64,000 bases of DNA from the NCBI RefSeq assembly GCF_964188315.1, contig NC_135667.1:17236001-17300000 (forward strand), in the 5' to 3' direction. Source of the DNA: Podarcis muralis (lineage: Eukaryota). The stretch's first letter is position 1, and each line of letters begins with the position of its first letter. Both the position numbers and the translations under genes were made by a program. Of this stretch, positions 22,861 to 46,790 are shown piece after piece. The notes beneath the pieces are model-generated. The model ran no database searches. It worked only from the letters and a program-made list of their open reading frames with translations, and was not told where the DNA came from.

Positions 22861-25800
22861 TCATTCTAGGCCAATCCACTTCTTCACCACGCTTAGGATA
22901 TCTCCAGCTAAAAGCAGCACCTCCTTCTCCTTGTATCTAAGGAAAGCTTCATTGGGAATGGTGGGTGAATTGTGGTAGCTGGGATACTGCGTTCTCTTGT
23001 CATCCACGCCATGCTGCCGGAGTTCCTCAATCTGATCAGGCAGCTTTTCCAACTCCTGTCCATAAGAAGCTACCTTACTAGCCAGCATTGGAAGAGTCAG
23101 ATTCCTGTCAAAGCGACCTCCCTGGTAGTATTCAACTGCTGTCAGGGCTTTCTCCACTGCCCGGTAAGTCTTGTAAAGCAGCCATTCAGTGCTACCCTGA
23201 CCAGCACTACTGGCTGCCGCCTTCAGATCACACTTGGCTTGCCTTAGCCAGCGCCTGGCCTCCTCCAAGCAGTGAAGTTTTGATTGATCCTTTGAATACT
23301 TTGGCCCTCTCTGATGGAAGGACCAGAAGTTGTAGTTGCAGTGGCCTCCTCCTCCTCCTCCACCCCATCCTCCTCCACCCCCACCCCATCTTTGCCTGGT
23401 GAATTCTGTACGCCTCTCTTGATGCTGATGAGCTTGCTGGTCCCATTCACCCCAAAATTCAGAGCTCCTCTTGTAGGAACCTCTACTTTTGGGTCCCCCT
23501 CTGGAGCCACTGGGCGTTCTATTGTTCTCCATCTCCTTGATCTTGTCTTTAAGGTATTTGAAAATTTCATTGGCAGAATCCTCTTGACCTATGTTTTTAT
23601 CTGGGTGGTAGCACAGATAGAGTCTTCTTAAAGCCTTCCTCCTCTCATCCTCTGACAAGCTCCAAATTTCAGCCAAGCAGGCATCCACTTCTTTCTTTAT
23701 CTCACTCAGTGGCCTCTCGTACCAACTGCCACTTGTAAGTGGTCTTGCAGTGCTGCTAGCACCAGGGGAGCCTTCTGCCAAGACCACAGCTTTACTCAGA
23801 TCAGATGCAGAGTTATTCCTCCGGAAATGGTAAAGGTCATAGGCGCTGACTTCTGCATGCCGCCCTCCTCCCAAGTCAACAAGGTATGTGTCTACTTGGC
23901 CAGTACCGCTCTGCCGTGGCCCAAGGGCTTCAAGGACCACAGCGTAGAGGTAATGCTCTCTGGGCTTGGAAGAATCCAGGTAACCCACGTAATCTTCTGG
24001 CAGAAAGGTATGGAGGATGCTCATGTCCAGGCTGTCATACCATTCCTCAGGGATGTCCTCTCCAGGAGAAGGCAGGATATAGGCATTTAGGTTTGCTGGC
24101 AGCTGCAAGGGCACTTTGTTTTTCTCTAGCACCTCAGCAATTTCCTTGGGCCTTTGGCGAACCAAAATCTGCTCAAGGACCATCAGGGCCTGCGAGCTAA
24201 ATCTTTGTCCTAAAAGCCTATTCAGCTCTGTGGCTAAATTGACAGAGAACTCCACACCCCACTGTGCATCTTTGCTCTCCTGGTGTGCAAGGTAAATCTG
24301 CAGTTTGCCATCTGGCATTGTTGCAACATACACTGTCCTGGCACACTGGGTTCCTTCCACACTCTGCGAATTGTGCACCATGGTTGTGCACACTTTTTCA
24401 CAACAAACCACTTCTAGCCGCTCCGGTGAGAAGCGTCCTTCAAACATGCATTCCACTTCCTCTACTTTTGTCCCACCCTGCCATTTAAGCAGTGCAACCA
24501 GAGCATGCTGGAACTCGCAAGACATGAGTAGTTCTTCTAGCCAGTTTTGGAACTCACAGTGTTCCCCATAGGTACAGAGTTTCAGAGAGGACTCTTCCAG
24601 CTGCTCTTCAGTGATATCTGACAAGTTCTTGGGGCGCAAGGCTTCAGGCAGCCGATGCAGAAGCCTCTGCTGCTTATACTTGTCGTAAGGTAGCTCACAT
24701 ATTGAGAGATCTATCAGAAAGCGAAATTTGCACTGCAAGTCCTGGGGTTCCTGGCTATACTTGTATAAACTAAAGATGAGGCTGTTTGATGGATATAGCT
24801 TCCCATCAGCACAAGGCAGATGCAGTTCTTTCAGCTCTGAGAAATCCATTTGATCCTTTGCTTCATCTAATAGCTGGAAGAGGAACTGAGTGGCCCTGAG
24901 CACTGTTTTGGTGAGGTTGGCATGCAGTGTAGCCTGCCTTACAGTCTCTGCATGAATTCTGGCCAGAACACTGGCATAGTGATGGATGCTTGCCTCATCT
25001 TCCACTCCCAGTTTCTCCAGGACATCCATATAGACCGCTAGCTTTGGTGGTAGCTTGTAAAGATACGGCCGGAAGTCCTGTGGGTATTTTAATGAGACCA
25101 CCACATTTTGGGCCTCTGCTACCTCACCGCCATCCACTAGTACCACAGGGAATCCCTTTAAGCAGCCAGTCTCTAACGTTTGCTGTCGCGACAAATAGCC
25201 ATAAGCTGACTTTAGGATATCCTCTCGAGTTTTCCTAGCTTTCGGAGTGTCACATGGTGCCTGGCATACGTTTCTTAGATTCTCCAAGACTAAATGGGCT
25301 GGCAAGGTGTGCAGCACTCCCAGTTGTTTTAGGATGGTTTCTTTATTTTCCCCAACATATAGAACAGAAGGCAGAATGACCGCTGAAGTCCACACCAGGT
25401 CTGCTTTCGCAGTTAACAAGGAACCTTGGGGTGCCACAGGAGTATTACACGGCACATATGGCGAGTGAAGGCAACACAGATCTTCAGAGATCTTCTTTGG
25501 CAATAGGAAACGGATCTTGGACACTGTTTCCAGGAAGGCCTCTGAGAAGGTTTCACTGGAAAGCAAGTAGCTCCAGAGTGCTCTCCTCCTTTCATCAAGA
25601 TCATGGGCACCATCCTTCAGTTTTCCAGCCCTCAATGCTTCTTTTGCAATTTGGTTAGCCAACACTAGAAAGTCTTCCTCAGAGATCTCTTGCCGCAAGC
25701 CCACATCAAGTAAGAACTCTTTCAACTCCCATATATTCTCTGGCCACACTGAGTCATAGAATTTGCGTGGCACGAACAGAGAATCCATTCTCAACTCCTT

Positions 25801-28800
25801 GAAACACATTTTCTCCTCATAAAAGTAGGACACAGGACGCATCACACCTTGCTTGTCCCGGATGAAGGCAAAAGACTGGAAAGTTGCCACCACTGTCTTT
25901 TTCTCGGCCTCATATTCCTCAGGATAATGCCTCTTGATAAGGAGGAGTAATCTCACAGCCTCCAGTACACGAGCTTCGAGGAGATGGGGCAGCCAAGGCA
26001 AAAGCTGCTTTACAAACTGCTGCAAATCATTCATTACACCAATACTCAAGCTCTTACTGAGATCTCGGTTCAGCCAGCTATCACTCAGCAGGACAGTCTT
26101 CTCATCTACCTCATAAAGCTCCTGGAATTTCTTGGTTTCCTTTGGAATCTTGGACTCCAAGATGTAGATATTCCCGTACGAAGACAACGAAACGTGCTTC
26201 CCTTGGTGTGTTTTAAACACGGGCAAGGATTTCAACTTGCTTAGCAATCCATGGTCATTCTTCAGCGTCTCCGGTTGGCTGCTTAGGAACTGCAACAGCG
26301 CTTCAAAGTCCCACCCTTTGAGCGCATCCCAACACAGGTCATGATGAGCTGCCAGTTGTTCGAGCACTACTGTAGGATTCTCAATCTGCAACACACATGG
26401 CAGAATGCAATGTGCAGCGAGCTTTGGAGGCAAAAGAGAGGAGTCCAACTTGGAAAAGCCCAGTTTGCAGAGAATTTCAGTAACAGTACCTGCTTGACCA
26501 GGCATTATCGTGTTGAGGGACTCAAGGGGAACCAAGAACTTAGTGCAGCCACAACACACAGGGAGCATGGCACAACCTTTGAAGAGGGAAACTAGCTCCG
26601 CAAACATATTTTTCATCGTGTCTGAATTCCCAGTCATGCAAATCTGGTTCTCAAAGAAAGCCCACAATTCACGGAGCCATTCCCGGCCTTTATCAGTACT
26701 GACCCTGTTGTCCAAAGACAGCATCTCCTTAACGAAGGCCACAGAATCAGAGAGTGTAAAATCCTTTAGAAACCCCATCTGTACTAACAGCTGCCTGGCC
26801 TTTCTATCAATTTGGCAGGCAAAGAAACAGTCTTGACGGTGTGGGAAAAGATTGTGCACACTGCTATGGTATGGAGGACACTGCTGAGTGAAGCACCTCA
26901 GCATGTTATCTTGGGTCACCAGCAAAGGGAGACCTTCCAGGCAGCTTTTGTCATCAGGAAGAAGCTCACTGAGGCAGAACTCGAGGAGAGCAGAACAGTA
27001 ACGGCTATTCTTCACAGGTGTCAGATGAAGTGGGCAGGGCAGGAGAAAGTTGGGCAGGTTCTTGAGGAAGCAGCAGAGGGAAGGAGAATCGAGGGTTAGG
27101 ATATCAACTCCTGCCTTGACAAAATGGTCGCATACCAATTGCAAATGTTGGAAGGCAGGGACAAAATTCATGCCCAGACTCTGAAGAGTAAGCTCAAGAA
27201 CCTCACTTATCTCAGACGGCAGGAAATAGGGATCATTGGTTGGGTGGCCCAGTCTGGGTGCACTCCAGTGCACACTCACTTCTTCCATCTTAACTCTATA
27301 CTTGAAATTAATCTCCTTCTGGTACACAGGGACCAAGGGAAGCTGCTCCATGTATGCCAGTTCATACAAACGGGTCACCAGCTGTTGCCATGCTGGGGGG
27401 ACATCCCTTGTCACAAATGGGAAATACTGCAAATAGTTTGATTCCAGCCACTTCTCACATTCAGTCAGGGAGTAGAACTGCAGTGTTGTATCATTCAGCG
27501 CCCGGCGCAGCTCATAAAGCAAATGGCAGTACAATGGGGCAATGAGACACTGCAGCAGCAAGTTATTCCAGGACGTATTGGCACCACCTTCACCATCATC
27601 CTTCCGCAAGCCACGGCGAGCAGAGTCCACAGCAAAGTTCCCATTGATGTGGATGGGAAGGCCTGTTTCTTCCAGAAGCGGCAGTGTGCAGAAGGCCCTA
27701 CCAGGTAGCCGTCCGTCAAAACAAGCTGCCACACCCCCACACGCCAAGTCCATATTTTGCACGGTATTGTCACTCTCAAGCCCAATCTGCCTACCTACCA
27801 GCCAGTTGCTGGAAACATTGGAGATACTACTCTTCACCTTCATTCTGTAGAAGACTCTCATTGGCTCGCCATCATCCATTCCACCTGCTGCAGCAGCCTG
27901 TTGGAGACGCTTCTGGTATTCCAGTCTTTCAGGCTCACCACCTTCAGCCTCTACCCGCAGCACCTCCTTCAGTGTCCCTCCCCTCTCACTTATTATAGAG
28001 AAGACCACGCAGCGAACGTGGTTGAGGAACATCACAAGGCTGTCGGCTTCTTCAATGAGAGCCACCACAATTTTCTTCATGTCTTGCTCGGACACAGAGC
28101 TCTGGCAGATACGGGATGAGGCTGCACCATCAGGAGTACGTAAGGGTAACCGGAAAACTGTGCCTTGTTCCAAGTTAAACACATCAGGTAAAAAGGTATT
28201 ATAAACATCACGGATGGTGTCTTTGACTTCTTTAGCAAGGTTGTACATTCTACCAGGTGAGATCTCATCAGAATCAGGGAGGTAGTGCAACATGGGGTCA
28301 AAGACGCACAGAGCACTGTCCCCCGTCACAAAGGCAGGGCAGTCAGTCAAGTGATAAACTGTATTGAAACCTAGTCCATATTTGCCGGTAGCATCTCTCC
28401 TCCCACCTTTGGCACCAGAGCCCAAGCGCTGGATCCCTTCTATGTCACACCTCTGGAAGGTGCGGTCATTGTAGATGCAAAGTGCCGGGCCTTGAAGTTC
28501 ATTCCACTCCTTGCTGAAGACGCGATCAGTCGGGTGCTGTCGCCGATCCCAGACAAAGTGGACAAGATTTGCACCAGCATCGTCTGCATTCTGCAGCAGC
28601 TCCTTTAGCACATCCTGTGAAGAGGAGTACTCACGGAGGATGTTGGCCAGCCGGGTACAGATTTCTTCCTTGGCTCCAAAATCTGTGGCCCAGGAAGAGA
28701 GACCCTGAATCCGCTGGCGTGACAAGACACGACCTTTTGTGGTCTGAATGCCACAGCGCATAGCAATTTCCCGTGGGATCATGGCATGACAGAGCAGGGT

Positions 28801-31800
28801 CCCTTTCTCATGCGGAAGCCATGGTGTGTCATCAAAGAGGAGCTTCGGCAATGGTCGAAGGACTTTGTGTTTGTCTGGGAAAAATACACTCTGGGCTTCA
28901 TAAGGACTCAACTGTTGACCCTCTGGCAGGGCCTCGGCCAGCCCTACAGTGATCAACCTGACAACTAGGTCCAGATGCCCTTTGGAAAGAGACTGTCCAG
29001 CTCCCTCCTTGGCCAAAGTCTGCAACACAGTGGCATAGTCCTTCACTTTGAAAGTCGCAGGCAACCCAACACACTCCCACAGCATCTTTTGCTTCTGGTA
29101 CTCCTGAGGCAGCTGGAAGAGATATGGAGCAGCATCAAAGAACAGGCAATGGGCCACACTGCACACTGACACAAAGCCAGTGTCCATGAAAACAAAGGGG
29201 AATGTCCTTGCCCTTTGGGACACCTCCACCTTGGACAGAGGGTTCATCTGCACTATTTCATTCAGGAACGCATAGCAGGTTTGTGCTATGTTTCCCAGCT
29301 CCATTCTGGACAGGGCATTGGAACTACATGATGCTTCCTCCAGTTGCATCAGCACTGTAGATATTGGTGGCTGATGATTCAGTCCTAGGAATTCCTTTAG
29401 CTCCATGGAGAGCTTCAAGCCTTTACCAAGGGCTGTCTTGTCCAGGACAGGCTCAGTCAAGCCTACCAGGGGGTGCAGCTTATGGCAGTAAACCTCTTTG
29501 GGGCAGCAGAGTTTGCGTTGGTTAGCAGGTAGTACTGCTGGCAAGAAGGGAATGTCTCTGAAAGTAACCTGGGTAGTGTTGCTGTAGCTTTCCTGCAGGT
29601 GGTCCTCAAGGAGCTCTAGGATGCAGCGGGCACGCTGGCAGGCCTTGACTGGGTCATGACTCCACAAGGCTGCCACAGTTCTGGCTCGGGCTATCAGTTC
29701 CTCCATTTCTACACAATCTTTGGCCATGCCAAGATGCTCCAAGCGCAACAGCCTCTCTGGTTCCAGAAACCCTGTGCCCGTGGGGAAACGGCCATCTTCA
29801 GGAGCGTAGAGAGGTGCAGCGCAGCCCCTTGGGTGTACAAGTTCTTTAATGTTTCTCAGCAAACTATTGGGGACAGTTGGAATGCAAGGCCAGGATGTCA
29901 AGATCTTATTCACGCCAGCATCATTCATATCCAGAGCACGAAGAATGAGGACATCACGATCAGGCACTGCCAGCTGAGCAAGATTGGGCAAAACAAGCTC
30001 ACAGAGGAATCGTGCCCAATTGTAGGTGTTTGGCAACAGGACGTCCTCCTGGATGCAATCTCTTAAGTTCATCTTCACCCAATCTGGAACTGACACCGCC
30101 ATCTTTGGCTCTGGCAAAAGTAAAGAGAAGACCCTGAAAGCTATAGGTTCCAGATGCTCCTGACAGGTACTGTCAGAATTGAGGAAACAGGCATCCCGGG
30201 CTGGGCACCATCGCTGTCCATCAGAAAAGAGAACTGGCTGTTCCCCATCAACACCATTGACTAAGGCTTGGTAGAAGGCCTTGACTGTTTCACTGAATGG
30301 GTGCTTGGCACTGCGCACGTCAGGCCAGAAAGCATGGTACTCATAGTCCTCCAGCAATCCTTCCTCGTACATGTCCCGGAGCAGGGACAGTGCTCCAAGC
30401 CAGGCACCCAGCACGGAATCCCGTAAGAGCGCCTTGTTCCATTTCCCCTTCTCAGTAGCTTCCCAGAGTCCTTTGCGATTACTCTGCACAGCAAAGACTG
30501 CCGTGAGATGCAACGGGAGTCCAGTTTCAATAGGAAGAGGTAGAAAGCAGAAGGCACGGCCCTTAAAACCATCTACATCTGGAACCCATTTTCCAGCAGC
30601 AGTGGCAGGGCGGAGGGGCAAAGCAACGCTAGCAACAGGAGGCGAGAAATGGACATCCTTTTCTTTTCCCTGTTTGAAGACCTGAAGGGCTTCTCCTTGA
30701 GCAGAGCAGGAGTGTAGCAGGTAATGGCTGGTGACCACACTCGACTTCCATGTTGCTGTCAACTGCACAATAGTGGACGTACCCATCCTGACAAGTGCTT
30801 TCCTGCTCACTGTGGCTAATGGCTGGTTGGTTTCTGGGGAACTGGAACCATGAGGAAGGTGGGTCAGTGACACCTCCTGCACTTTTCTCAGGAAGATCAG
30901 CAGATACTTGTACATCTCCCGGAAACCAATTTGCAAGGATTTGATTCGACTGGGTCCAAACGGATCACAGCAGATCTGAGAGTCCTCTGCCTCCTCCTCA
31001 GTGCGGAAGGGCAGGCGGAGGAGCGTGCCTTGGTAATCATCTCCAGGTTGACAGCCAAAGATTCCTCTGAACGGTCGAAATTGTTCAGGAAATCCAGCGG
31101 CGACTTTTCGGTTCAATGTGAGACGCATGCCTGGTTGGCCTGAATTACGGATATGCTTCCGAAGGTGGGTGATGTTTGGGTCAAAGATGAGCATGGTGTG
31201 GCCACTGAGAAGAGAGGGCACATCAGTGATGTGGTAGACAGTGCAGAAGCCCAGCCCAAAGCGACCAATCTTGTCATCCTGCCGTTCCTTGGTAGCTGCA
31301 CCTAGACGGATGATGTTGGAGAAATCTGTCTCGGTGAAGAATGCATCATTCTGGGCCCAAAGTGCGGGGCCCTGGCAGGCAGCCATGCCCGGGTCCAGGA
31401 GTCCTTCAGTGGTACCGTTATGCTCACGGAGATCGACTAGGAAGCGGCAAGTTTGGGCGCCAGCATCCTCAGCATTTTGCAGCAGTTCCAGGAACACATC
31501 TGCATCCTGGCTGTATTCACGAAGGATGTTACGGATCCGGAGGGTGATTGGCTCCGAAGGACCCCACGCCTGAGCCTCCAACACTTCCAAGCCTGAAAAC
31601 CGTGTGCTTAGCATTTCCACACCATGGAAGGTAGCAGTGGCAGAGGAAACAGATTCATGCACCAAAGTAGGTGGGTCGCCATCCAGCTCAGCAAGGTGTG
31701 CCCGATCCATGTCACAGTACAGCACAAAACTGGCCGGGCGTAGAACAAAACCGGACAGTCCTTGAATCCGCACAGGCACTGGCATTTCCCTTTCTCCATG

Positions 31801-33662
31801 GTAGCCACGAGCGCACAGCCAGTCCAGGACAGCTATCACGAGGAGCAGTTCAGCATGCATGCCGCCTTGTGGTCGGGCATTGATTTGATCTGCCAACTTC
31901 TGCATTGCTTGGCACACTTCCTCCTCTTTTGGTAACTTATGGACCCCCCATGCTGCAAACAGCTGGCTGTAACCTTGGAAGTCCAGAGGCACTCGTGAAA
32001 TCAGGGCTGTAAGGTCTAAGCCATCAGGGTAGGCCAGCACCACATCTGCAGCCAATGAGAAGCCAGTCCCATTCCACACCATAGGTCCCACAGGTGGCTT
32101 CTGGAAGTCCCTCAGGTGCTGTTGCATGTGCCGATAGATGCTGTGCAGCTTTGTAGTTAACACAAAGGCCTCCTCAGGGTGACATCCCTGTGCCAAGGCA
32201 GCTAGATTCTCCATCACTTTCTCTGGTGGAGGAGCGTTCTCCAGACCCAGTTCTTTTGCAGCTTCTGGCTGAAAAGCATTAGTCAGTCCCATGACCAGCC
32301 CGACAAGAGCAGCGTACCTCTCTGAGCGAAGCAGTTCAGGTGCCAAGAAATCTCCAGCTGCCGCCAATGTGGAAGCGTTGGTGGCAGGCACCCAAGGCAG
32401 GGACCGCAGCAGCTTCAGCTCCTGCGAGGAGAAGCGTGAGAGTAGAGGAGTCTCATTGCAGACCCGGATGAGTGCCCGTGATTTGGCACTGGCATCTGCA
32501 GCCTCTTGCAGTTGACCAACTTCCTCCGCAGCCATCAATGCATCTGCTGGACAGACAGCACTGAGATCAGATTTCAGGCCCAGAACACGAAGGGTTCGCA
32601 GTGCTGCTGGCTCCCGGAAGGGCCCTGTGGGGAAGCGGCAAGGTCCCAATAAGTCCTGCAAAGTGCGATTCTCTGGATCATAGAGATCACTGGGCCTGGC
32701 CAACCTTCCTGATCCGCAATCCAGGAATGGCAGCTCACGACACAAAGTTTGCAGCTCTCGGGTCTGGCTGAAGAGGGAGTCCCCATTGTGCAGCACCCAC
32801 AGCATGAGCCGCTTGGCTTCCTGTGCCCAACTGGCATATGCCCCCTGCATCATCGCCTTGATGCACAGCAGGCACAGATCTGGCGTCCCCAGGAGCTTCT
32901 GCCCGATTAGCAAGAGCAGGTGGCGTTCAGCTTCATTATGACACAACAGTACAGGCTCTGGAGTTAGCAGATCCGAGGGCACTGGTGGAACCAAGTTCTT
33001 CTCTAAAGCCAGGTGGTGCTGGGCTGGCACCAAGCCAGACCTGGTGGGTGGAAGGAGGGAGGGCATCTTGAAGAAGAGCGGCAACTCAGTTAGGACTTCG
33101 GCTTCTTTGGGGGAAAGCGACACAGCCGTGGAGAAAAAAGCACTCAGGCTCTTGATCTGGCAGGTGGGCAGAGATGCAACGCGACCAGCCACGGATGCCA
33201 CCCCTAAATGGGCAAAGACCTGCAAGACACTCCCAGCCGTGGGTTCTAGGACGTACTCTCTCAGCTGGCGGTGGCACCATTCTGGCTGCCAGCTCCGGAC
33301 CACAGTGCATCCCAGTCTCTCCAGAATGCCAGCCACTTCGTCCGGCAGACAACGCCCCTCGTGGCTCTGGAACAGCAGAGTAGGCTGAGGCAGCAGCCGT
33401 GCCAATTGGATTCCACTGTGGGAGTTCTGTAGAGGAGTCAGCGGTATCAGGGGGCATCCCTTGAAGGGTGCCAGGGAGGGAGCATGGCGACTCAGGAAAC
33501 TCCAGAAAGCAGAAAGCCACTCAAGCGGGGGCTGTTTTGGGTACTCCTTTGGGCACCAAGATACAGGAGCAGGGTTGCTGCTGACCCAGTCCTTAGGGAG
33601 AGATTCACGAAGGTTCTGCTCAATGACATTTTGATCCATGGAGACAAAGTTCCTGAATAACC
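22861..33662 (-). CDS. Sacsin-like protein, giant last coding exon (10,802 nt): end of SRR1, SRR2, SRR3, SH3-like region, J-domain, HEPN
   Basis: Open frame with ELLQNAEDAGA...KIGRFGLGF (SRR2), [11 protein letters not shown]...TGKYGLGFNTVY (SRR3), LRRLYLCYHPDKN (J-domain HPD, 23599-23607) and EARRWLRQAK...(HEPN). Acceptor (TC)n-ATATTCAG|GG at 33663/33662, phase 1. Confidence 0.96.
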
Positions 33663-33666
33663 CTGA

Positions 33667-33710
<44 letters not shown>

Positions 33711-34668
33711 CAACCACCATTTGTGTGCACTTGCATTTCCTGTTGGGAGCAAAGTGGCAATGTATACACTACTTCTATGCCCAGCACTGAAAAGTACTTT
33801 GGATGCAACTGAACTCCAATATGTATAGGTCTGTGAATGATTTGGTATCACAATGATGCTAGAGCACTGCTGAAGCAAAGTGAGCCTGAAACTGATCAGC
33901 GTACCAAAAACCAGTGTGGTGTAGTGATTACAGCAGGCAGATGCAAACTGTGGCCCATCAGATATTGCTGAACTACAACTCCCATCATCCCAGGCCATTG
34001 GCCATGATTAAGGGAGCTGGTGAAAGTTGTAGTTCATCAACATCGAGAGGGCCAAATGTTGCCTGCCCCTGGATTAGAAAATAAGACTAAGGCAAAGGGG
34101 GGACAACCTTCAGCCCTTGCCCTAATTTCATGCAGGTGGTGGAGGACGACCCAACAGAGAATGATGGAAGGGTGGCGGAATCCACTGCAAGCAATCAGAT
34201 CAGACCTTTGACAAGAGTGATCCATCTCTACTGGTGGCTGGGGGGAAATGTTCCCCAACCCTGTGCTTAAGGGTTAAAATGCCCAAACTAGCTGTGAAGT
34301 TAATTTGTTTACTTGGAGACAGCCACTCTACTGCTATTTGGTGTCACGCTCACTATCTTTCCACCTAATCTATTTTACAGTGTTGCTGGGAGGAGAAAAT
34401 GGCGCCTGTGTGTAAAAAGCATGTGTTTGTACATGGTAGAACATTTACACTGGTGGCAGCCAGCCTGGTGCCCTGTGGATGCTGTGGATTACCATCCCCA
34501 TAATCTCTGACCGTTGGCCATGCTGGCTGAGGCTGAAGGAAGTTGAAGTCTAGCATGGCTAGTGAAAATAGGAGTTGTAGTCTAACAGCATCTTAAGAAC
34601 ACCAGGGTGGGGAACCCGTAAAACACCAGAAGCTGATCATGGTGCGCTCAGGAAACTGAAAGTCTCAC

Positions 34669-34757
34669 CCTTTTCTGCAATTGTTTGCAGATGCTTCAGC
34701 AGCTCAGGGTTTAGATCCTTGGGCAAGAACCGGTGAGCCAGGCCAGGCAACAGGATC
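34669..34757 (-). CDS. Sacsin-like coding exon (89 nt)
   Basis: TTTTGCAG|G...AAGG|GTGAGA; encodes (R)ILLPGLAHRFLPKDLNPELLKHLQTIAEK(G), homologous to the short human SACS exon before the giant exon. Phase 2 to phase 1 bridges the flanking exons exactly. Confidence 0.9.
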
Positions 34758-35238
34758 CTGCAAAATCGGCAGAAAGAAACCAAAGTCAGTTAGGAAAGAC
34801 AAAGAAATGGGATGCACTATGGGACAAACACCCAGTTAATGCCACTGGTTTATTTATGGGGCTAACCATTTTAGGGAATCTAAAGAAATGCAGCATGGGC
34901 CTCTTTATCCTGTAGGGCAGTATTTCTCAGAGTGAAAACTGGGTCTCAAAGAAGTGCAGGCTGGCGCTAGGGGAGACACTGAGCCAAACTATGCACATGA
35001 AAAAAGTGCATAAGGGCCTCTGTCTCTTGGTTTGGTGCAGTGTCTGAAATGAGCCATAGTGAAGACATTTGTGAACTGCCTTGCAAGGTGTGTATGTGTG
35101 CGTGTGCACATGCGTGCATTAACCATTATGTAAGTCCATTAATTGGAACATCTAATAGGGAGAGGACATTTAACTGTGGTAGGGCGAAAAGGACAATGCC
35201 GGGTTACCCTGGGGATCATATGTGGTAAGACTGCTCAC

Positions 35239-36673
35239 CTGGGGAAGTTGTGGTTATCGAGGAAGACCGTCTCTCCAGAATCTCCAAAGCAGGTAAAGTT
35301 TCCATTGGCTGTCGGCAGCAGTGGCAGATTCTTCAGCTCCTGGTAACACCCATCTCCAACCAAGTACTCCAACAGCAACTGTTTCTCTGTCAAGGATATC
35401 CCATGCCACACACTGGTAGTCTGTTGCAGGGTCTCCCTGACAAACTTCGGTGTGGCCTCTTGCACCGCTGCCCTGCCTTTGGCACCCCACACCAAAGCTC
35501 GGCGCACATGGAGCGGAGCAGCAGCAAGTGGTGATTCTGCCAAAATGAGGGCCTTCTCCAGGGCCTTCTCTACTGGTTTACCACTCACTATCTCTGGCAA
35601 GATCACGGCTTTGCAGGGGTGGAGCAAACGAGGTTCCCCATCCCCGACTCGTACCAAGAGTTTCATGTCCATCAGTGTCTGGCATATCTGAACCACTAAA
35701 GGCTTGTATCGTAGTTGTTGGCTTTGGTCTGGGTCTGGCCATGCCCCATATGGGTTGTCCGGACAGGTAGATGCCAGCAGTACCATTTGGCAATAAGCAA
35801 CAGGCAACATCTCCTCCATAAGCAAGTGGTTCCATTGACCGTCGGCTCCCCTCGCCTGGGACCCCTCTTCAGACCACTGCACGTGTCTTCGGTCATCTGT
35901 CAGCTGGAAGGGGGCACTGATGTGCAGTGGCAATCCAGTGGTGTTTTCCTCTGTGGCCGGGAGCGGCAAGACGCAGCTGAGGCGTCCCATGCACTTATCT
36001 TGCAAACAGTAAGCCAAGGACAACACAGGCTTAGAGCTGACCTTCACTGCGAGATCCCACAGTTCTGGGAAGGCATCCTTTTTCGCTTCAGCAGACAACA
36101 CAAGCCAGTTGCACTTGCTGGCCTGTCCAGTCCCAGTGCCACATAGAGTAAGTGTTTTGATGTGGACACCCATGTCCAGTTTAGTGCCCATAGCATCATC
36201 AACAAGGTTTGCCTTTCCACTACTGCATTCTGCAACTTCCAGCACACCTTGGCTCATGCCCAACCCATTAAATGGGCGAGTGGTGGCCTCAGCCTTCAGC
36301 ATCTCACGGATGGCACCATCGGACTCAATGAGACCCAACGTCAGTTTCTTGATGTTCCTGAGGAACAGCAAACTAATGGGGGCATCATTCACGAACGAGA
36401 GCAGCAGTTTCTGCACCCGTTCTGGACTGTAGAGATTTTCTGAGATCTTCGATGGACTCTGTCGTAGCGGGAAGCGAAACAGGGTGCCTGGAAAGCGGCC
36501 CTCCGCAGTTGGGCAAGGCTGGCCCAGAGACTTCAGTGCTGCCCAGAATGGTTGGAACTGGTCGGATGCCTCTTCCCATTCACTCACCTCCCAGAGCTGA
36601 CCCCCGTCATGTAATGCCATCTGCTGTGGGTCCAGCACCCCCAAACATACATCAGAAAGTATAGATGGGAAAT
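35239..36673 (-). CDS. Sacsin-like coding exon (1,435 nt), SRR1 body
   Basis: TATTTAG|AT...CCCAG|GTGAGC; (D)FPSILSDVCLGVLDPQQ...FPGTLFRFPLR...LPLHISAPFQLTDDRR...DNHNFP(R). Confidence 0.93.
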
Positions 36674-37087
36674 CTAAATAGAGTGAAGGGAAGGAATTCA
36701 GCCATTAAAATGTGGTTGCCCCAGACTTGGTTCCTTTCCCCCCTTCATGCTATTTCAATTAATCTTTATCTCTCTCAATTTCCCCCATCTCAATGATGGC
36801 ATTAGGCATATTTCGCTGGGGAGAGCATTCTACAAATGGGGAGCCACTGTTGAGAAAGCCCATTCTCCCATTCCCTCCCCCTCAGAAGAAGTACACAGAC
36901 AAAGGTCTCTGAGGATGATTGCAGGGCCCAGGTATGCCGATGTGAGGAGAGAGAGGTGGTCCCTGAGGTCTTGGGGTCCTGAGCTGTCTTCTAGTCCTTT
37001 TCCCTATAATTCTTATGCCTTCCTCCCAAAGACATCTCGTTTTGAAGACTGACAATCTCCCAAATTGAGCCAGGCAGAACTTCTCAC

Positions 37088-37234
37088 CTGTGATATGGTA
37101 AACTGAATTGAAGCCCAAGCCAAAGCGTCCAACTGTAGAAGGGTCATCCTCCTTGTGACTGATGCCTGGACTCTGGATCCCTTCCCAGTCAGCCTCAGAG
37201 AATAGACCGTTGTTATAGGCAAGAAGTGCAGGGC
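37088..37234 (-). CDS. Sacsin-like coding exon (147 nt), SRR1 ATP-lid region
   Basis: TTTTTCAG|GC...CACAG|GTGAGA; [49 protein letters not shown](D). Confidence 0.93.
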
Positions 37235-38183
37235 CTGAAAAAGAGAAATGTGGTCATGCAATTTTTACTCAAGTGCCTTGATGATGGTTCGATTCACGGT
37301 GTCACTCCCAAGCCAAATATGACATGGCACAATGTCTGAATTGCAAACTAGGGTTTGTGATCGGCCAGCAAACCAAAACAGAAATCATGATTGAACATTT
37401 TGTGGCACGAGATCCTGTCTAATTTAGCAAACCGTGGTAACAGCCACCTCCAGAGGGCTGTGGCACCAGAGAGATGGGAGCAGGCTAATAAACCTGATTG
37501 CTATCAGAAGCAGATCAGGTCCTATAAACAAGGGCTGGAGAGCCCTGCCACCATCCCTGACCATTGGCTATAATCACTGGGACTGATGGGAGTTGGAGTT
37601 CAACTATATCTGAAGAGCCACAGCCGCCACCCCCCATCTCTTTTCTAGATTAAGTTTTCTGCAAACCATGATGTGATACTGGAATAGAGCCAATATATTG
37701 AACATACTGGAGGTGCACTCTCAGGTACTCACATCATTTGTTTAAAGCACATTTATACGACTTTAACAGTCACTGTGAGAGCATATAAGGCCAAATGTCC
37801 CAAAATGGATATTGTAGCACAGAAATGAGAATGTGGGGAACTACTGTACAGTGGGCCAGCCATATTTCCCTCCCACAAGGCACCTGGAAGGACACTACAT
37901 CATGGCAGCTTTCCTTGTTTGCATTGTGGGACGAAATGGCCCCAAAGTAGAGGAAGTTCCCTGCTGCATTCCCAGGCACAAAGAATCATTCTGGTGTCAA
38001 TATAAGGAGAACTTAGAGGAGCCTTGGTTACTGACTGCTAAAAAGGAAGCCTTTGGCCCTTGAAAGCATCCCTGAAAAATTATTATGAATTTCATCCAGC
38101 CAACCTCCTCCCTATAGGATACATTGTGATTTCTTTGCTGGGGCCCCCAGAGCACCCGCCATTGGGAGCTGTCTAATCCATAC

Positions 38184-38295
38184 CTTGGGTGCTTGCCAGC
38201 CCCTCTGAGAAAAGGCTCTGGGTTCCAAAACTCCGTGCATCATAGAGCAAGATCACCTCTTCAGCCCCCGCATCATCTGCATTTTGGATCAGCTC
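38184..38295 (-). CDS. Sacsin-like coding exon (112 nt), SRR1 GHKL N-box
   Basis: CTTCCTCAAG|GAG...CCAAG|GTATGG; [37 protein letters not shown](G). Confidence 0.93.
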
Positions 38296-38840
38296 CTTGA
38301 GGAAGAAGAGAATGAGAGTAGGAATAAATGCCAGGGGTCAACACAGACACAACTGTGGAAATTGCTACATGGATGCCAGCCCCACATTCCATAAACTGCT
38401 AGACATATACAGGGGTCGTCAATATCACCCCTTTCAAACTTTACCTATTTAGAAAAGGGAGGGCAAGCCATCTCCTTGCTGCTGTGTCTGTCCCGCATCT
38501 GTAAAGGCTGGGAGACCTGGCAGGCTTCTTTGCTGCAAATCTGCACCTTCTTTAATATTGCACTAGAACTGGCCATTCTGATGTTTTTGACATCCTTCTT
38601 TGGTACCCCTGCACCCAGCCACTCCCACAAGCCGTCCTTTGGGCCTGCGCTCCAGAACAGCTTCCTGCTCTAAACTTGCAGTCTTACTTCTCTTCCCCCA
38701 AAATCCGGGTGTTTGGCTGCCTCCTCTCTGTGAACACGCAAGTTGTTCAAGCCCTACTTAAAATGCAGTCCATGTGAAATGGCTTCGCTCTCAAAAACGG
38801 CAAATGCAAAAAGCCCAGGCCCAATGCTTAAAAAACTTAC

Positions 38841-38928
38841 TTTTAAGATCTGACCCCCATCTGGGTACTTGCGGAGGATACCCTGCAAGTATTTGAGGAC
38901 AGGAGGTGATTTTTGTCGAAAGCCCTTC
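38841..38928 (-). CDS. Sacsin-like coding exon (88 nt)
   Basis: CTTTCTTTCAG|G...TTAAAA|GTAAGT; (R)KGFRQKSPPVLKYLQGILRKYPDGGQILK, like human [27 protein letters not shown]. Confidence 0.9.
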
Positions 38929-41197: not shown

Positions 41198-41220
41198 CTC
41201 TTCTTCGGCCCCTGAGACAT
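41198..41220 (-). CDS. Sacsin-like first coding micro-exon (exon 41198-41228), MSQGPKK(R)
   Basis: CACTTTTGCAG|GTATCAACATGTCTCAGGGGCCGAAGAAGAG|GTAAGA; phase 2 matches the next exon. Joined CDS is 12,696 nt (4231 aa plus stop). Confidence 0.8.
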
Positions 41221-42139
41221 GTTGATACCTGCAAAAGTGAGGAGAAAAATGCAGAATGAGGAAAAAAATGGAGTGTATAATCTCACCAATACAATTTGCA
41301 CATTGGCCCCCACTGGACAAAAAAAGAGCTCATAAACTATTGTTCCTTCCGTAAATGGACAGTTTTTAACAAAACAGACAAGAGGAATCACTTACCATGA
41401 TGTTACAAACACCCCCCCCCCCAGTCATCTCTCATCAAAGGGATTTTGGAACAATAGAAAACCCTGCCAGGCTGCAGTTTGTTATGTGTGCTGGAAACTG
41501 TAGTTTATGTGAGGAAGAAACTACAGTTCCCAGGATTCTTTGGGGAAAACCAGGTGCTTTAAATGTATGGTAAGGATGTGATTTCAGTTACCAAAGGCAA
41601 AAGCAAACAGTCCAAGCCTGCCACAAGCAGTGTGGCATCTTTCTCTGTCCTCCGCTTCCGATCCAAAACACGTTTACTAAATTATTATTACTGTAACATA
41701 AAATTTGTATGCCGCTCTGTACCTGCAGGTCTCAGGGCAGTTCACAGGATAAAATCACAATATAAAAACACAAAGTACATAATCAAAATCAAAACAAAAC
41801 CCAATAACCCCCCACAACACATTTTAAAATTATGTAAGTCCTTTTAAGCCATTGAGGCCAACTCATTTAAGTGAGCTTACGTAAGCTTACTTGTGATTGA
41901 CTTGTGATCTGGAATGTGCTTTTGTAGCCAGTAGACTGTGCAACAATTCCATGAGGTGGACAGGAAAGGTGGCCGATATTTATTTAAACCACTATTTTGC
42001 CAGATATACATTTAAACCACTATTATACTATTTTAACAGTCATGGCTTCCCCCCAAAATTCCTGGAAACTGTAGTTGGTTAAGGGTCAGTTCATCTTTTA
42101 TTCATTTTCTTATGCAGGCATACAACCTTTTTACTATTT

Positions 42140-42710: not shown

Positions 42711-44368
42711 GCAGAACTTTTTAATTTTTTTTTTAATTGTTACAACCTAAAAGGTGTTAAAAATCACTTCTGCGTATTTTGAAGTGATGTTTCCCTAAAT
42801 TATACTGAAGTATTATTGTATGGGAACTTTCCTCCCAAGACTTTCCACTATTCACCTCCTAATATTCCTGTCTTTTCTCGTGTTTCTCAGTCCAGCTGCA
42901 TTTTGCATAACCTAGCAGAGTGGACCCTACTAATAATTTATCAAATATCCCTGCATCATTTCAAACTACAGACCCAACTGCAAACTTGTTCAGCTCTCCT
43001 AATTTTAAAGGGAGCACTTTGGAAGAATGGATCACAAACACGTTAAGGGGAAGAGACACATCCCCTGGTCATCACAGGCCACTGAGGTTATTTGGTTCAC
43101 TCCTTTTCAGCCATCAAGACAGCCAAGCACATAACAAACAACACATTTGCAGAGCCAGAACACAATGGAAGCACATGATCTGTTACAACTATTGCAGAAT
43201 CATCATTTCCGGAGAAATTTTTGTGTTTCCTAACAAGAGTTGATAAGAGAGGATGTGCTCTGACTGAAACCTTTTTTTCAGCCCAAAGTCCACATTGTGG
43301 GCATGGCAAGAAGCAAAAAGTGGACAGAGAAATGGGTGTGCCTCTTACCCTCATCAAGAAGAAAACATCCCAGTAAACTCAACACTAGAGGTTTCTAGAT
43401 GGGCACAAACTTATACATCTATGCAAACAAAAGGCATTATCAAAAATGTTCAAGGACACCTTCCAAGCCAGCCAAAAACAATGGAAGAGGATGCAGAGCC
43501 CAGATGGTGTCTGGGGGTGAGTGTCAAGAAAGCAAAAGGGAAGGGGTTTACATCTGTAGATTCCCAACTGCAGTTTTATAGGAATTGCTTGGGTACCAGA
43601 ACAGTGGGGCTGCTCACTTGCCACCTCACATTCTTCAGCCTTTCTTTTAATTGCTATATGCAGGGAAACGAAATTCATTCAAGTGACAAGGCCTTCCCTG
43701 ATTATCACTGCATCCAGACAGTAGGGAAAGTTTCGCCTTTTGAATGCCTGCCAGCCGGGCCAACTAGAGGCAGGAGGTTCCCCAGAATGAAAAACGGTGA
43801 TAATTTCACGCTGTACATTTTAGATTATAGCCATATTTGTACTGTACTTCTACTGCACATAAGCCAAGTCTACACTAGGAGAACGAGGTCTAAGAGCCCA
43901 GCACTGCACCATTTTAGTCGACAAGGCAGGGAACACGTTTTAACTTTCCCTCCAAGTTTTATAAAAAGAAAAGGCAGGTTCCCTGCAAGTAGAAATTAGC
44001 GCGATAGGAACAAGGCTGAGCTATATATTTTTCTCCCCCCCCCCCCCCGAAGTATTAGCTTTTTGCTTCTGCGGGGAATTTGCTAGGTGAGGAAAACCTC
44101 AAAAGCGATGGCTCACAGACGCCAATCTCTCAGCCTGGCCTGTTGGGAGGATAAAATGCGAAAGAGGCACCTTGCGCTCTTTGAAAGAAAGGTGGGCTTA
44201 GAAGTGTCTGTATTAACTAAGCAAATGTGTTTAGGATCAGAGCATTTCGCTGTGTTTCCAGAGACGCTCGTACTTCTTCTAAGCCTGTTTAAACCCCGTT
44301 ACTCCTCCCAAAGAACCCAGGAGTCCTGCTGAATCGGTCCCCATCACCTGCTGTCTGTTATTACTCAC

Positions 44369-44640
44369 CGCGTCTCTCGGAAGATGCAGGTGCGAAGATC
44401 CCCGCGCAGCTTCCCGGCCGACGATGACTAAAGAGCAAAAAAGGTCCGCCGCCCTACCTCGCCTCAAGGCGGATGCCCGGGGAAGCAGCGGCGGCTGCGC
44501 TTTAAAGATGCCAGTCGCTTTCGATTCCGGCGAAATGGAAACCGAAAGCAATTTCGCTCCGTTTGGGAAAGAGGCGGGGAATGTCTCGGAGCTGAGGAGT
44601 GGGACGGGCACTTTTAGAGGGGGATGTGGGGCAAAGACGG
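44369..44640 (-). promoter_or_regulatory. CpG-island promoter and non-coding exon 1 of the sacsin-like gene
   Basis: Strong donor GCG|GTGAGT at 44369/44368, no ATG in the presumed exon, TTTAAA at 44501-44506, GC box GAGGCGGGG at 44571-44579. TSS position inferred. Confidence 0.7.
44532..44548. promoter_or_regulatory. ISRE / IRF-binding element, three GAAA half-sites
   Basis: GAAA-TG-GAAA-CC-GAAA-G, fitting (GAAANN)n; similar to the ISG15-type GGAAACCGAAA core. Confidence 0.75.
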
Positions 44641-45503: not shown

Positions 45504-46455
45504 TTTTGTTGTTGTTTAGTCTTTTAGTCGTGTCCGACACTTCGTGACCCCCTAGACCAGAGCACCCCAGGCACTCCTGTCTTCCACTGCCTCCCGCAGT
45601 TTGGTCAAACTCATGCTGGTCGCTTTGAGAACACTGTCCCACCATGTCGTCCTCCGTCGTCCCCTTCTCCTTGTGCCCTCAATCTTTCCCAACGTCAGGG
45701 TCTTTTCCAGGGAGTCTTCTCTTCTCATGAGGTGGCCAAAGTATTGGAGCCTCAGCTTCAGGATCTGTCCTTCCAGTGAGCACTCAGGGCTGATTTCCTT
45801 CAGAATGGATAGGTTTGATCTTCTTGCAGTCCATGGGACTCTCAAGAGTCTCCTCCAGCACCATAATTCAAAAGCATCAATTATTTGGCGATCAGCCTTC
45901 TTTATGGTCCAGCTCTCACTTCCATACATCACTAGTGGAAAAACCATAGCTTTTACTATACGGACCTTTGTTGGCAAGGTGATGTCTTTGCTTTTTAAGA
46001 TGCTGTCTAGGTTTGTCATTGCTTTTCTCCCAATAAGCAGGCGTCTTTTAATTTCATGGCTGCTGTCACCATCTGCCGTGATCATGGAGCCCAAGAAAGT
46101 AAAATCTCTCACTGCCTCCATTTCTTTCCCTTCTATTTGCCAGGAGGTGATGGGACCAGTGGCCATGATCTTTGTTTTTTTGATGTTGAGCTTCAGACCA
46201 TATTTTGCGCTCTCTTCTTTCACCCTCAATAAAAGGTTCTTTAATTCCTCCTCACTTCCTGCCAAGGTTGTGTCATCCGCACATCTGAAGTTGTTCGTAT
46301 TTCTTCCGGCAATCTTAATTCCGGCTTGGGGTTCATCCAGCCCAGCCTTTCGCATGATGAATTCTGCATATAAGTTAAATAAGCAGGGAGACAATATACA
46401 GCTTTGTTGTACTCCTTTCCCAATTTTGAACCAATCAGTTATTCCATATCCAGTT
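45504..46455 (-). mobile_element. 5'-truncated Bov-B (RTE) LINE with RT C-terminal reading frame (45552-46394)
   Basis: SPCLFNLYAEFIMRKAGL...NNFRCADDTTL...FTFLGSMITADGDSSHEIKRRLL...WRRLLRVPWTARRSN, and a 3' tail GGGGTCACGAAGTGTCGGACACGACT(AA..CAA)n typical of Bov-B. Confidence 0.92.
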
Positions 46456-46489
46456 ACACCTTATGAACTACAATTCCCAGCAGTCTTAA

Positions 46490-46790
46490 CAAACCCCAAG
46501 GGTCATTGAGTCCAACCCCTGGCAATTCAGGAATCTCAGCTAAAGCATCCATGACAGAGGGCCACCCAACTTCTGCTTAAAAATCTCCAAGGAAGGAGAG
46601 TCCACAACCTCTCGAGGGAGACTGTTCCACTGTTGAACAGCTCTTACTGTCAGAAGGTTCTTCCTGGTGTTTAGCTGAAATCTCCTTTCTTGTAACTTGA
46701 AGCCATTGGTTCGAGTTCTGCCCTCCAGAGCAGGAGAAAACAAGCTTGCTCCACGTGACAGCCCTTAAGGTACCGGTAGTTCAAGATGGC
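46490..46790 (-). mobile_element. CR1 LINE 3' fragment
   Basis: RTRTNGFKLQERRFQLNTRKNLLTVRAVQQWNSLPREVVDSPSLEIFKQKL is the CR1 ORF2 C-terminus, followed by the GGGGTTGGACTCAATGACCC 3' UTR. Confidence 0.88.

What the first reader, a model, noticed from the sequence alone, without database searches (positions are those of the whole stretch)
44519..44560. Triple ISRE in the promoter of the sacsin-like gene: a candidate interferon-stimulated giant GHKL-J-HEPN protein
Seen: GAAATGGAAACCGAAAG (44532-44548) has three tandem GAAA half-sites at IRF spacing, an inverted GGAATCGAAAG just 5' of it, and lies about 30 bp upstream of a TTTAAA box and about 165 bp upstream of the exon-1 donor. A second GAAACGAAA is in intron 1 (43665-43673). 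Known: (GAAANN)n is the ISGF3/IRF element of ISG promoters; from memory, 'sacsin' transcripts are among virus/poly(I:C)-induced genes in teleost studies, whereas mammalian SACS is studied as a neuronal co-chaperone. Inference: this paralogue is an interferon-induced effector retained in reptiles.
Basis: partly seen in the sequence, partly recalled or inferred. Interest (0 to 1): 0.82.

Follow-up and report, generated by a model that had tools for sequence, protein, structure and literature searches.

The report
Conserved interferon-response element, sacsin-like promoter
A lizard gene for a giant sacsin-like protein has a textbook interferon-response element just upstream of its predicted start, and the element has been kept for about 200 million years in lizards and snakes and in related form in a turtle and two birds, so the gene is very probably switched on by virus infection, though nobody has measured that.

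Summary
GAAATGGAAACCGAAAG sits at 44532-44548 and is the only GAAANNGAAANNGAAA in the 64-kb window (0.05 expected). A second half-site pair, GGAATCGAAAG, lies at 44518-44528, TTTAAA at 44501-44506 and a GGTGAGT donor at 44368.

The gene below it, on the minus strand, is a sacsin-like paralogue with three SACS ATPase domains, a J domain, a HEPN domain and no ubiquitin-like domain. Its ATG lies in a tiny exon 2 (41228-41198) behind a conserved splice acceptor, so exon 1 must be non-coding.

In six other squamates, gecko to python, the same element lies upstream of the same gene. It is the best-conserved 18-mer of the promoter alignment (92% against a mean of 50%), followed by the TATA-like box and the exon-1 donor. 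A turtle has both elements plus TATAAA. Two birds keep GGAAACGAAACT near the ATG. The intron-1 GAAACGAAA is not conserved.

A tree separates this fast-evolving sacsin-like clade, sharks to lizards, from slowly evolving SACS. Fish papers report virus and poly(I:C) induction of sacsin genes, in lumpfish specific to one paralogue.

No expression or transcription-start data exist here, so interferon induction is a strong inference. The scan had not noted this before. It is a new member of a known kind and moderately interesting.

The parts
44532..44548 (-). Element 1: triple GAAANN repeat (ISRE / IRF-E). It reads CTTTCGGTTTCCATTTC in gene orientation and lies about -72 to -56 from the predicted start.
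   Evidence: Unique in the window, 0.05 expected. Most conserved 18-mer of the 7-squamate alignment, 92% against a mean of 50%. 6 of the 7 perfect triple motifs in 471 kb of window plus loci lie at this homologous place.
44518..44528 (-). Element 2: GGAATCGAAAG (GGAANNGAAA type, IRF or ETS-IRF composite-like), forward in gene orientation, about -52 to -42.
   Evidence: Counterparts: GAATCGAAAC in Rhineura, GAAAACGAAAC in Hemicordylus, GAAGCGAAAC in Eublepharis, GGAATCGAAAC in the turtle, GGAAACGAAACT in both birds. Not kept in Elgaria, Sceloporus or Liasis.
44501..44506 (-). TATA-like box (CTTTAAAG).
   Evidence: Second most conserved block, 76%. It reads TATAAAAG in Sceloporus, TTTAAAAG in Rhineura and Eublepharis, TTTATAAG in Hemicordylus and TATAAAGG in the turtle, all oriented toward the gene.
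44369..44475 (-). Predicted non-coding exon 1. The 5' end is inferred from the TATA-like box; the 3' end is the donor G|GTGAGT with GT at 44368-44367. It contains no ATG.
   Evidence: The donor block is 74% conserved and an exon-internal block at 44414-44397 is 73% conserved. CpG observed/expected is 0.97-1.21 only at 44300-44600. No transcript evidence.
41198..41228 (-). Exon 2: acceptor ttttgcag|GTATCAAC, ATG at 41220-41218 (MSQGPKK), donor AAGAG|gtaaga.
   Evidence: The same tiny ATG exon behind a strong acceptor is seen in the six squamates and the turtle, and an AG-type acceptor in Strix and Mugil, but none is evident in Eudromia. This shows that a non-coding exon lies upstream.
22861..38928 (-). 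Coding exons 3-8 of the sacsin-like gene: 38928-38841, about 38301-38155, about 37244-37089, about 36692-35238, about 34765-34646 and about 33657-22861 (stop included).
   Evidence: tblastn of Zootoca sacsin-like against the window, 82-100% identity per exon. Exon 3 borders were read directly. Pfam finds SACS and HEPN above the cut-off and DnaJ below it. Matches to human sacsin HEPN (3O10, 2.5e-20) and J domain (1IUR, 6.9e-14).
43665..43673 (+). Probably not functional.
   Evidence: Not conserved in Rhineura although the surrounding intron aligns at 79%.

Best explanation
44518-44548 is a pair of interferon-stimulated response / IRF-binding elements in the core promoter of a sacsin-like gene on the minus strand. 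Element 1 is a triple GAAANN repeat and element 2 is a GGAANNGAAA site. They lie about 40-75 bp upstream of a start predicted from a TATA-like box at 44506-44501. The transcript begins with a non-coding exon of about 107 nt ending at 44369. It is spliced over a 3.1-kb intron to a tiny ATG exon (41228-41198) and then to the exons for a protein of about 4230 residues with three SACS ATPase domains, a J domain and a HEPN domain.

Proposed mechanism: after virus sensing or type I/III interferon signalling, ISGF3 (STAT1-STAT2-IRF9) and/or IRF1/3/7 bind the GAAA repeats and raise transcription, as at ISG15, whose ISRE has the same three-repeat register.

Shown here: the motif, its uniqueness, its deep conservation, the conserved promoter and exon architecture, and the paralogue identity. 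Inferred: factor binding, the transcription start and inducibility.
For: The motif is unique in 64 kb, with 0.05 expected.

The same element lies upstream of the orthologous gene in Rhineura, Elgaria, Sceloporus, Hemicordylus, Liasis and Eublepharis, 1.0-5.9 kb before the ATG exon. It is the top conserved block at 92% against a mean of 50%, followed by the TATA-like box and the exon-1 donor. Of 7 perfect triple motifs in 471 kb, 6 lie at this place.

The turtle has GAATGGAAACCGAAAG, GGAATCGAAAC, GC boxes, TATAAA and a donor 0.5 kb before the ATG. Two birds share GGAAACGAAACT 100-200 bp before the ATG in otherwise unalignable sequence.

The ATG exon follows a splice acceptor in nearly all species. 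There is a CpG patch only over 44300-44600, and the promoter block is not a repeat. Conservation with Rhineura ends about 60 bp beyond the element.

The ISG15 ISRE probe GGGAAAGGGAAACCGAAACTGAA (PMC9907019) shares the core GGAAACCGAAA and the same register.

The tree shows a separate sacsin-like clade with a Pogona-turtle path about 8 times longer than for SACS of Pogona and a turtle, different turtle species in the two clades.

Fish literature: sacsin genes are among the core virus-induced genes (PMC8875540; PMC11258392). In lumpfish, sacs-like goes up and sacs goes down after poly(I:C) (PMC11357929).
Against: There are no RNA data: the transcription start, exon 1 and inducibility are all predictions. 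Element 1 lies on the strand opposite to the gene in squamates but on the gene strand in the turtle, so orientation is not fixed. This is tolerated by ISREs but also fits a more general IRF site. Element 2 is lost in three of seven squamates. Liasis lacks a clear TATA box and donor in the alignment. The fish (Mugil) promoter was inconclusive: the only nearby TTTCCATTTC is 55 bp before the ATG, probably inside the intron. No paper was found that reports induction in any sauropsid.
Confidence: 0.72

Rival explanations
1. The elements are real IRF sites but serve constitutive or lineage-restricted expression, for example PU.1/IRF8 or IRF4 on the GGAANNGAAA composite, or IRF1/IRF2 basal activity in immune cells, rather than interferon or virus induction.
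For: Element 2 in the window, the turtle and the birds fits the ETS-IRF composite GGAANNGAAA. GAAA repeats bind all IRFs (established knowledge). No induction data exist.
Against: The invariant part is the triple GAAANN repeat with an ISG15-like register. The GGAA of element 2 is not kept in most squamates. Fish family members are induced by virus and poly(I:C) in many cell types.
Confidence: 0.13
2. The conserved block is a regulatory element for something else: an unannotated divergent transcript on the + strand, a distant enhancer target, or a site for another factor that reads GAAAG-type sequence, such as a PRDM1-like repressor.
For: Element 1 reads GAAA on the + strand, away from the gene, in all squamates. 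No transcript data fix the direction of transcription.
Against: The TATA-like box is oriented toward the sacsin-like gene (TATAAAAG in Sceloporus, TATAAAGG in the turtle), and a conserved donor follows on that strand. A non-coding exon is required by the acceptor before the ATG. No gene is called in the 10 kb upstream in six squamates, and in the turtle the upstream gene is co-oriented. Conservation with Rhineura stops about 60 bp upstream of the element.
Confidence: 0.08
3. Chance occurrence of an A-rich motif with no function.
For: 5 of 100 shuffles of the window gave one match.
Against: The same element is found at the homologous place in all six other squamates and a turtle, as the most conserved block.
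Confidence: 0.02

Closest known systems
ISRE of classical interferon-stimulated genes, such as the human ISG15 ISRE GGGAAAGGGAAACCGAAACTGAA used as an EMSA and reporter probe (PMC9907019, PMC5131898)
   Same: Three GAAA half-sites at 6-bp spacing, an identical core GGAAACCGAAA, and a position within about 80 bp of a TATA-type core promoter.
   Different: In squamates it lies in reverse orientation relative to the gene. The 3' flank is GC rather than CT. A second IRF-type site is adjacent. Binding and induction are untested in any reptile.
Teleost virus- and poly(I:C)-induced 'sacsin / sacsin-like' genes (PMC8875540, PMC11357929, PMC11258392, PMC3534563)
   Same: The fish proteins of about 4270 residues without a ubiquitin-like domain fall in the same clade as the lizard gene. 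Induction in lumpfish is paralogue-specific.
   Different: I could not link the published fish accessions to the clade by sequence. No ISRE has been described for them in the papers searched. The Mugil promoter was inconclusive here.
SACS (sacsin), the neuronal co-chaperone mutated in ARSACS
   Same: Three sacsin repeat regions with GHKL-type ATPase heads, then a J domain and a HEPN domain. HEPN matches 3O10 at 2.5e-20 and the J domain matches 1IUR at 6.9e-14.
   Different: A separate gnathostome clade with full support. No N-terminal ubiquitin-like domain: the protein starts 16 residues before the first SACS domain. About 350 residues shorter. The Pogona-turtle path on the tree is about 8 times longer than for SACS. 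No mammal among the best 120 hits. The HEPN motif is Q-x4-H, against R-x4-L in human SACS.
Tiamat / NO VEIN GHL-ATPase defence proteins (bioRxiv 10.64898/2026.09.30.754977 and 10.64898/2026.09.30.755639)
   Same: SACS-type ATPase plus solenoid supradomain. The first preprint lists a sacsin type without ubiquitin-like and XPCB domains in 'aquatic chordates', which matches this architecture.
   Different: Those proteins carry a PD-(D/E)xK nuclease instead of J plus HEPN. The preprints did not test the animal proteins for antiviral activity and do not report interferon regulation. The clade here also includes land vertebrates.

Membership tests
ISRE / IRF-E of an interferon-stimulated gene promoter | Sequence fits (A/G)NGAAANNGAAAC(T) or tandem GAAANN | tested here: met
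   GCGAAATGGAAACCGAAAGC at 44530-44549. Three perfect GAAANN units, unique in the window.
ISRE / IRF-E of an interferon-stimulated gene promoter | Lies in the proximal promoter, within about 200 bp of the transcription start | tested here: inconclusive
   The start is only predicted, from a conserved TATA-like box 26 bp away, a conserved donor 164 bp away, a CpG patch, and the need for a non-coding exon. No transcript or CAGE data.
ISRE / IRF-E of an interferon-stimulated gene promoter | Kept under purifying selection in orthologous promoters | tested here: met
   6 of 6 other squamates, with one half-site changed in Rhineura. The turtle has both elements. Two birds have element 2.
ISRE / IRF-E of an interferon-stimulated gene promoter | Bound by ISGF3 or IRFs, and the gene is induced by interferon or virus | not testable with these tools
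   Only indirect support: fish sacsin-family genes are induced by virus or poly(I:C).
Sacsin family (SRR x3, J, HEPN) | Three SACS/SRR supradomains with a GHKL N-box | tested here: met
   Pfam SACS matches three stretches in the full-length orthologue and two plus one in the window's exons. [17 protein letters not shown] and LLQNADDA are present.
Sacsin family (SRR x3, J, HEPN) | [quoted passage not shown] | tested here: met
   HEPN scores 43.8 bits against a cut-off of 22. DnaJ is below the Pfam cut-off (20.8 against 27.8), but phmmer to the human sacsin J domain 1IUR gives 6.9e-14 and HPD is present.
SACS orthologue (canonical sacsin) | N-terminal ubiquitin-like domain, and placement in the SACS clade | tested here: not met
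   The SACS domain starts at residue 17 with nothing before it. The tree puts the gene in a separate, fully supported sacsin-like clade. Pogona, Pristiophorus, Pleurodeles, Discoglossus, Protopterus and Lepisosteus each have one gene in each clade.
Catalytic HEPN RNase | Rx4-6H motif | tested here: not met
   Where TT1696 has R-YPDA-H and amphioxus has R-YPYL-H, all vertebrate sacsin-like proteins have Q-YPxY-H. Lacertids have an Arg two residues earlier, but it is not conserved.

The most novel reading that the evidence does not exclude
The sacsin-like paralogue is an interferon-induced antiviral effector present in jawed vertebrates from sharks to birds. It keeps the ancestral defence role of the Tiamat / NO VEIN / sacsin ATPase family and was apparently lost in mammals. 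Canonical SACS would then be the slowly evolving copy exapted for neuronal proteostasis. If so, a whole vertebrate innate-immune effector has been overlooked because mammals lack it.
Probability: 0.3. Interest if true: 0.75.

Novelty: new member of a known kind. Interest (0 to 1): 0.55.

Why it matters
Interferon-stimulated genes of reptiles are almost unstudied, and this gene is absent from the mammalian catalogues. A deeply conserved ISRE-type promoter on a fast-evolving giant ATPase-J-HEPN protein gives a concrete candidate antiviral gene shared by fishes, amphibians, reptiles and birds. Its bacterial and plant relatives (Tiamat, NO VEIN) are reported to act in phage defence and in plant-virus interaction respectively. 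The finding also offers a regulatory explanation for why 'sacsin' keeps turning up in fish virus transcriptomes. It makes one question directly testable: was the sacsin family's original role immune, with the human disease gene SACS as the derived copy?

Tried and rejected
1. Reading the sequences showed that 10001 is the ATG of a tiny coding exon behind a splice acceptor, so the ranges are CDS ranges.

2. The intron-1 GAAACGAAA is not conserved.

3. Mugil: one upstream GCGAAATGGAAAAC turned out to be coding sequence of a tandem duplicate's HEPN domain. The TTTCCATTTC 55 bp before the ATG is probably intronic. Fish promoter evidence is therefore inconclusive.

4. Look-ups for a sea turtle (not on record) and a caecilian (no DNA) failed.

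5. No transcript-derived contig was found in the lacertid protein cluster, so exon 1 could not be confirmed by RNA.

6. The Pfam ubiquitin model did not pick up N-terminal domains in candidate long proteins. SACS orthologues were found instead by searching with hagfish sacsin.

7. Literature searches for sacsin with chicken or interferon-stimulated genes, and for sacs with ISRE and fish, gave nothing relevant. One broad search (sacsin, ranavirus, duck, lizard and others) returned no paper mentioning sacsin.

8. Transposable-element origin was rejected. The promoter block has no other copy in 471 kb of window plus loci apart from the orthologous places and one 27-nt hit at E 0.001.

Full report
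**The observation**

On the + strand, 44532-44548 reads GAAATGGAAACCGAAAG. The pattern GAAANNGAAANNGAAA occurs once in the 64-kb window, against 0.05 expected from dinucleotide-preserving shuffles; 5 of 100 shuffles had a match. The two-unit pattern GAAANNGAAA is not itself enriched: 7 found, 3.9 expected.

Read on the minus strand, the region is GCGAAATTGC-TTTCGGTTTCCATTTC-GCC-GGAATCGAAAG-CGACTGGCATC-TTTAAA-GCGCAGCC. The second site, GGAATCGAAAG, is at 44518-44528, TTTAAA is at 44501-44506, and a strong donor GCG|GTGAGTAAT has its GT at 44368-44367.

**The gene**

The minus strand carries a 3619-codon open frame (22861-33720) with SACS domains, a HEPN domain (43.8 bits against a cut-off of 22) and a weak DnaJ match. 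A further SACS piece lies in 35235-36644. The best database match is 'sacsin-like' of the lacertid Zootoca vivipara, at 92% identity.

tblastn of that protein places the coding exons at 38928-38841, about 38301-38155, about 37244-37089, about 36692-35238, about 34765-34646 and about 33657-22864. The first seven codons are in a separate tiny exon: ttttgcag|GTATCAAC ATG TCT CAG GGG CCG AAG AAG AG|gtaaga, with the ATG at 41220.

The same tiny ATG exon follows a strong acceptor in the six other squamates and the turtle. An AG-type acceptor is also seen in Strix and Mugil, but none is evident in the tinamou Eudromia.

**Orthologous promoters**

I fetched the orthologous loci of Rhineura, Elgaria, Sceloporus, Hemicordylus, Liasis and Eublepharis. 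Each has the element on the strand opposite to the gene, 1.0-5.9 kb upstream of the ATG exon:

| Species | Element |
|---|---|
| Elgaria | GGGAAATGGAAACCGAAAGC |
| Sceloporus | GAGAAATGGAAAGCGAAAGT |
| Hemicordylus | GGGAAATGGAAATCGAAAGG |
| Liasis | GGGAAATGGAAAGCGAAACT |
| Eublepharis | CAGAAATGGAAACCGAAAGC |
| Rhineura | GAAGCGGAAACTGAAAGC |

In a MAFFT alignment of about 450 nt from the seven squamates, mean column identity is 50%. The most conserved blocks are these:

| 18-mer block | Window coordinates | Identity |
|---|---|---|
| Element 1 | 44549-44532 | 92% |
| TATA-like box | 44508-44492 | 76% |
| Exon-1 donor | 44379-44362 | 74% |
| Block inside the putative exon | 44414-44397 | 73% |

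Across all 471 kb held (window plus ten loci, both strands) there are seven perfect triple motifs. Six are at this homologous place and the seventh is a GAAATA microsatellite.

The TATA-like box is oriented toward the gene: TATAAAAG in Sceloporus, and TTTAAAAG in Rhineura and Eublepharis.

CpG observed/expected reaches 0.97-1.21 only over 44300-44600 and is 0-0.8 in the flanks. The block has no other copy in the held sequence, so it is not a repeat family. Conservation with Rhineura ends about 60 bp beyond the element.

**Beyond squamates**

In the turtle Carettochelys, 0.5 kb before the ATG, the order is GAATGGAAACCGAAAGC, GGAATCGAAAC, GGGGCGGGG three times, TATAAAGG, about 50 nt, then CAG|GTGCGA. 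Element 1 is nearly identical to the lizard one but sits on the gene strand. In the window it is bracketed by a 7-nt inverted repeat, GCGAAAT...ATTTCGC, so a small inversion is plausible.

In the owl Strix and the tinamou Eudromia, the 12-mer GGAAACGAAACT lies 100 and 200 bp before the ATG. It equals element 2 with one change, and the surrounding sequence does not otherwise align. Strix also has AGTTTCAATTTT next to TTAAAAG.

The mullet Mugil was inconclusive.

**Which sacsin**

The protein starts [46 protein letters not shown], that is, directly at the first ATPase head with no ubiquitin-like domain. Searching with hagfish sacsin recovered canonical SACS proteins of about 4580 residues, many carrying PF00240. 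They came from sharks, fishes, amphibians, a lizard, a snake, a turtle, birds and mammals.

A FastTree of 42 full-length proteins (4244 columns) gives two fully supported gnathostome clades:

- SACS, with the cyclostome sequences as sister group.
- Sacsin-like, holding sharks, gar, teleosts, lungfish, amphibians, turtle, birds and squamates in roughly species-tree order.

Several species have one gene in each clade. The sacsin-like path between Pogona and the turtle Carettochelys is about 1.16 changes per column, against about 0.15 for SACS of Pogona and the turtle Chrysemys.

No mammal or crocodilian was among the best 120 of 174 hits to the window's protein. This suggests loss in those groups but does not prove it. 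The tree is a quick method, so only the deep split is relied on.

**HEPN domain**

Aligned to human sacsin HEPN (3O10) and the bacterial TT1696, and to orthologues, the catalytic R-x4-H reads as follows:

| Protein | Motif |
|---|---|
| TT1696 | R-YPDA-H |
| Amphioxus | R-YPYL-H |
| Human SACS | R-YPDL-L |
| All vertebrate sacsin-like proteins | Q-YPxY-H |

Each vertebrate paralogue has therefore lost a different catalytic residue. A canonical HEPN RNase activity is doubtful for both.

**Literature**

- A review of nodavirus transcriptomes lists sacsin among the core induced genes in cod, sole, grouper and sea bass (PMC8875540).
- Trout sacsin-like is one of eight genes induced in all responding leukocyte types by IPNV (PMC11258392).
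- In lumpfish, sacs-like is induced and sacs is repressed by poly(I:C) (PMC11357929).
- A 2026 preprint relates sacsin to the antiphage ATPase Tiamat and notes a sacsin type without the ubiquitin-like domain in 'aquatic chordates', without testing function. A companion preprint links NO VEIN to plant-virus interaction.
- The ISG15 ISRE probe is GGGAAAGGGAAACCGAAACTGAA (PMC9907019; PMC5131898). It shares the core GGAAACCGAAA and the three-unit register with the lizard element.
- I found no paper on an ISRE at a sacsin gene or on induction in birds or reptiles.

**Interpretation**

The best reading (about 0.72) is an ISRE/IRF module about 40-75 bp upstream of a TATA-directed start near 44475. 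It would drive interferon- or virus-induced transcription of the sacsin-like gene.

The motif, its conservation, the exon logic and the paralogy are shown. Factor binding, the transcription start and induction are inferred.

Rivals:

- IRF-dependent constitutive or lineage-restricted expression (0.13).
- A conserved element serving another transcript or factor (0.08).
- Chance (0.02).

The earlier scan note near this window, on a histone cluster, has no bearing, and a word search of the scan's notes found nothing on sacsin.

**Verdict**

It is a new member of a known kind: an ISRE-bearing candidate interferon-stimulated gene. The added interest comes from the gene being a fast-evolving giant absent from mammalian catalogues and related to prokaryotic and plant defence ATPases.

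Noticed in passing
L005:7690-7740, L002:1430-1480, L006:3940-3990: Python, alligator lizard and gecko have a second ISRE-like block 1.3-3.1 kb upstream of the proximal one: AGCT..TTTTGGTTTCCATTTC..12-15 nt..GAAACAAAAC, inverted in the gecko. The window has no such copy. It may be a distal enhancer or an old duplication.
   Followed up: partly
window 22900-23000 (minus strand, HEPN C-terminus): All vertebrate sacsin-like proteins have Q-YPxY-H where bacterial and amphioxus HEPN have R-x4-H. Human SACS has R-YPDL-L. The two paralogues have lost different catalytic residues.
   Followed up: partly
tree (proteins P0001-P0399): The sacsin-like clade evolves several times faster than SACS. The Pogona-turtle path is about 1.16 changes per column in the sacsin-like clade (Carettochelys) against 0.15 in SACS (Chrysemys).
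   Followed up: partly
window 44530-44557; L008:9483-9500: Element 1 has opposite orientation in squamates and the turtle, although 20 of 21 bases match. In the window it is bracketed by the inverted repeat GCGAAAT (44557-44551) / ATTTCGC (44536-44530), which suggests a small inversion.
   Followed up: partly
L009:2700-3098: In Mugil, the 3' end (HEPN domain and stop) of another sacsin-like copy lies 6.9 kb upstream of the queried gene in the same orientation, so the gene is tandemly duplicated in this fish.
   Followed up: no
window 44305-44340; L008:9630-9800: Just inside intron 1 there is a conserved block CCGATT..CAGGACTCCTGGGTTCTTTGGGAG, shared with Rhineura, Elgaria and partly Sceloporus. 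The turtle intron has AGGACNCCTGGGTTCT three times. It may be a repeat-derived or regulatory motif.
   Followed up: no
window 44397-44414: There is a conserved block inside the predicted 5' untranslated exon, GGAAGCTGCGCGGGGATC, at 73% column identity across squamates. Its function is unknown.
   Followed up: no
window 13653-15095 (minus strand): A 480-residue C2H2 zinc-finger gene lies downstream of the sacsin-like gene. A 482-483-residue counterpart sits in the same place and orientation in five of the six squamate loci (none was called in Eublepharis), so it could serve as a synteny anchor.
   Followed up: no
window 45552-46509; 55401-56525: A reverse-transcriptase fragment (LINE remnant) lies 1 kb upstream of the promoter. 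A second C2H2 zinc-finger open frame is on the + strand at 55.4-56.5 kb.
   Followed up: no
window 33657-33720: The long open frame runs upstream of the real exon border through a CT/GA microsatellite, which translates as SLSLSLSLS. The mechanical ORF start at 33720 is therefore not the exon start.
   Followed up: partly
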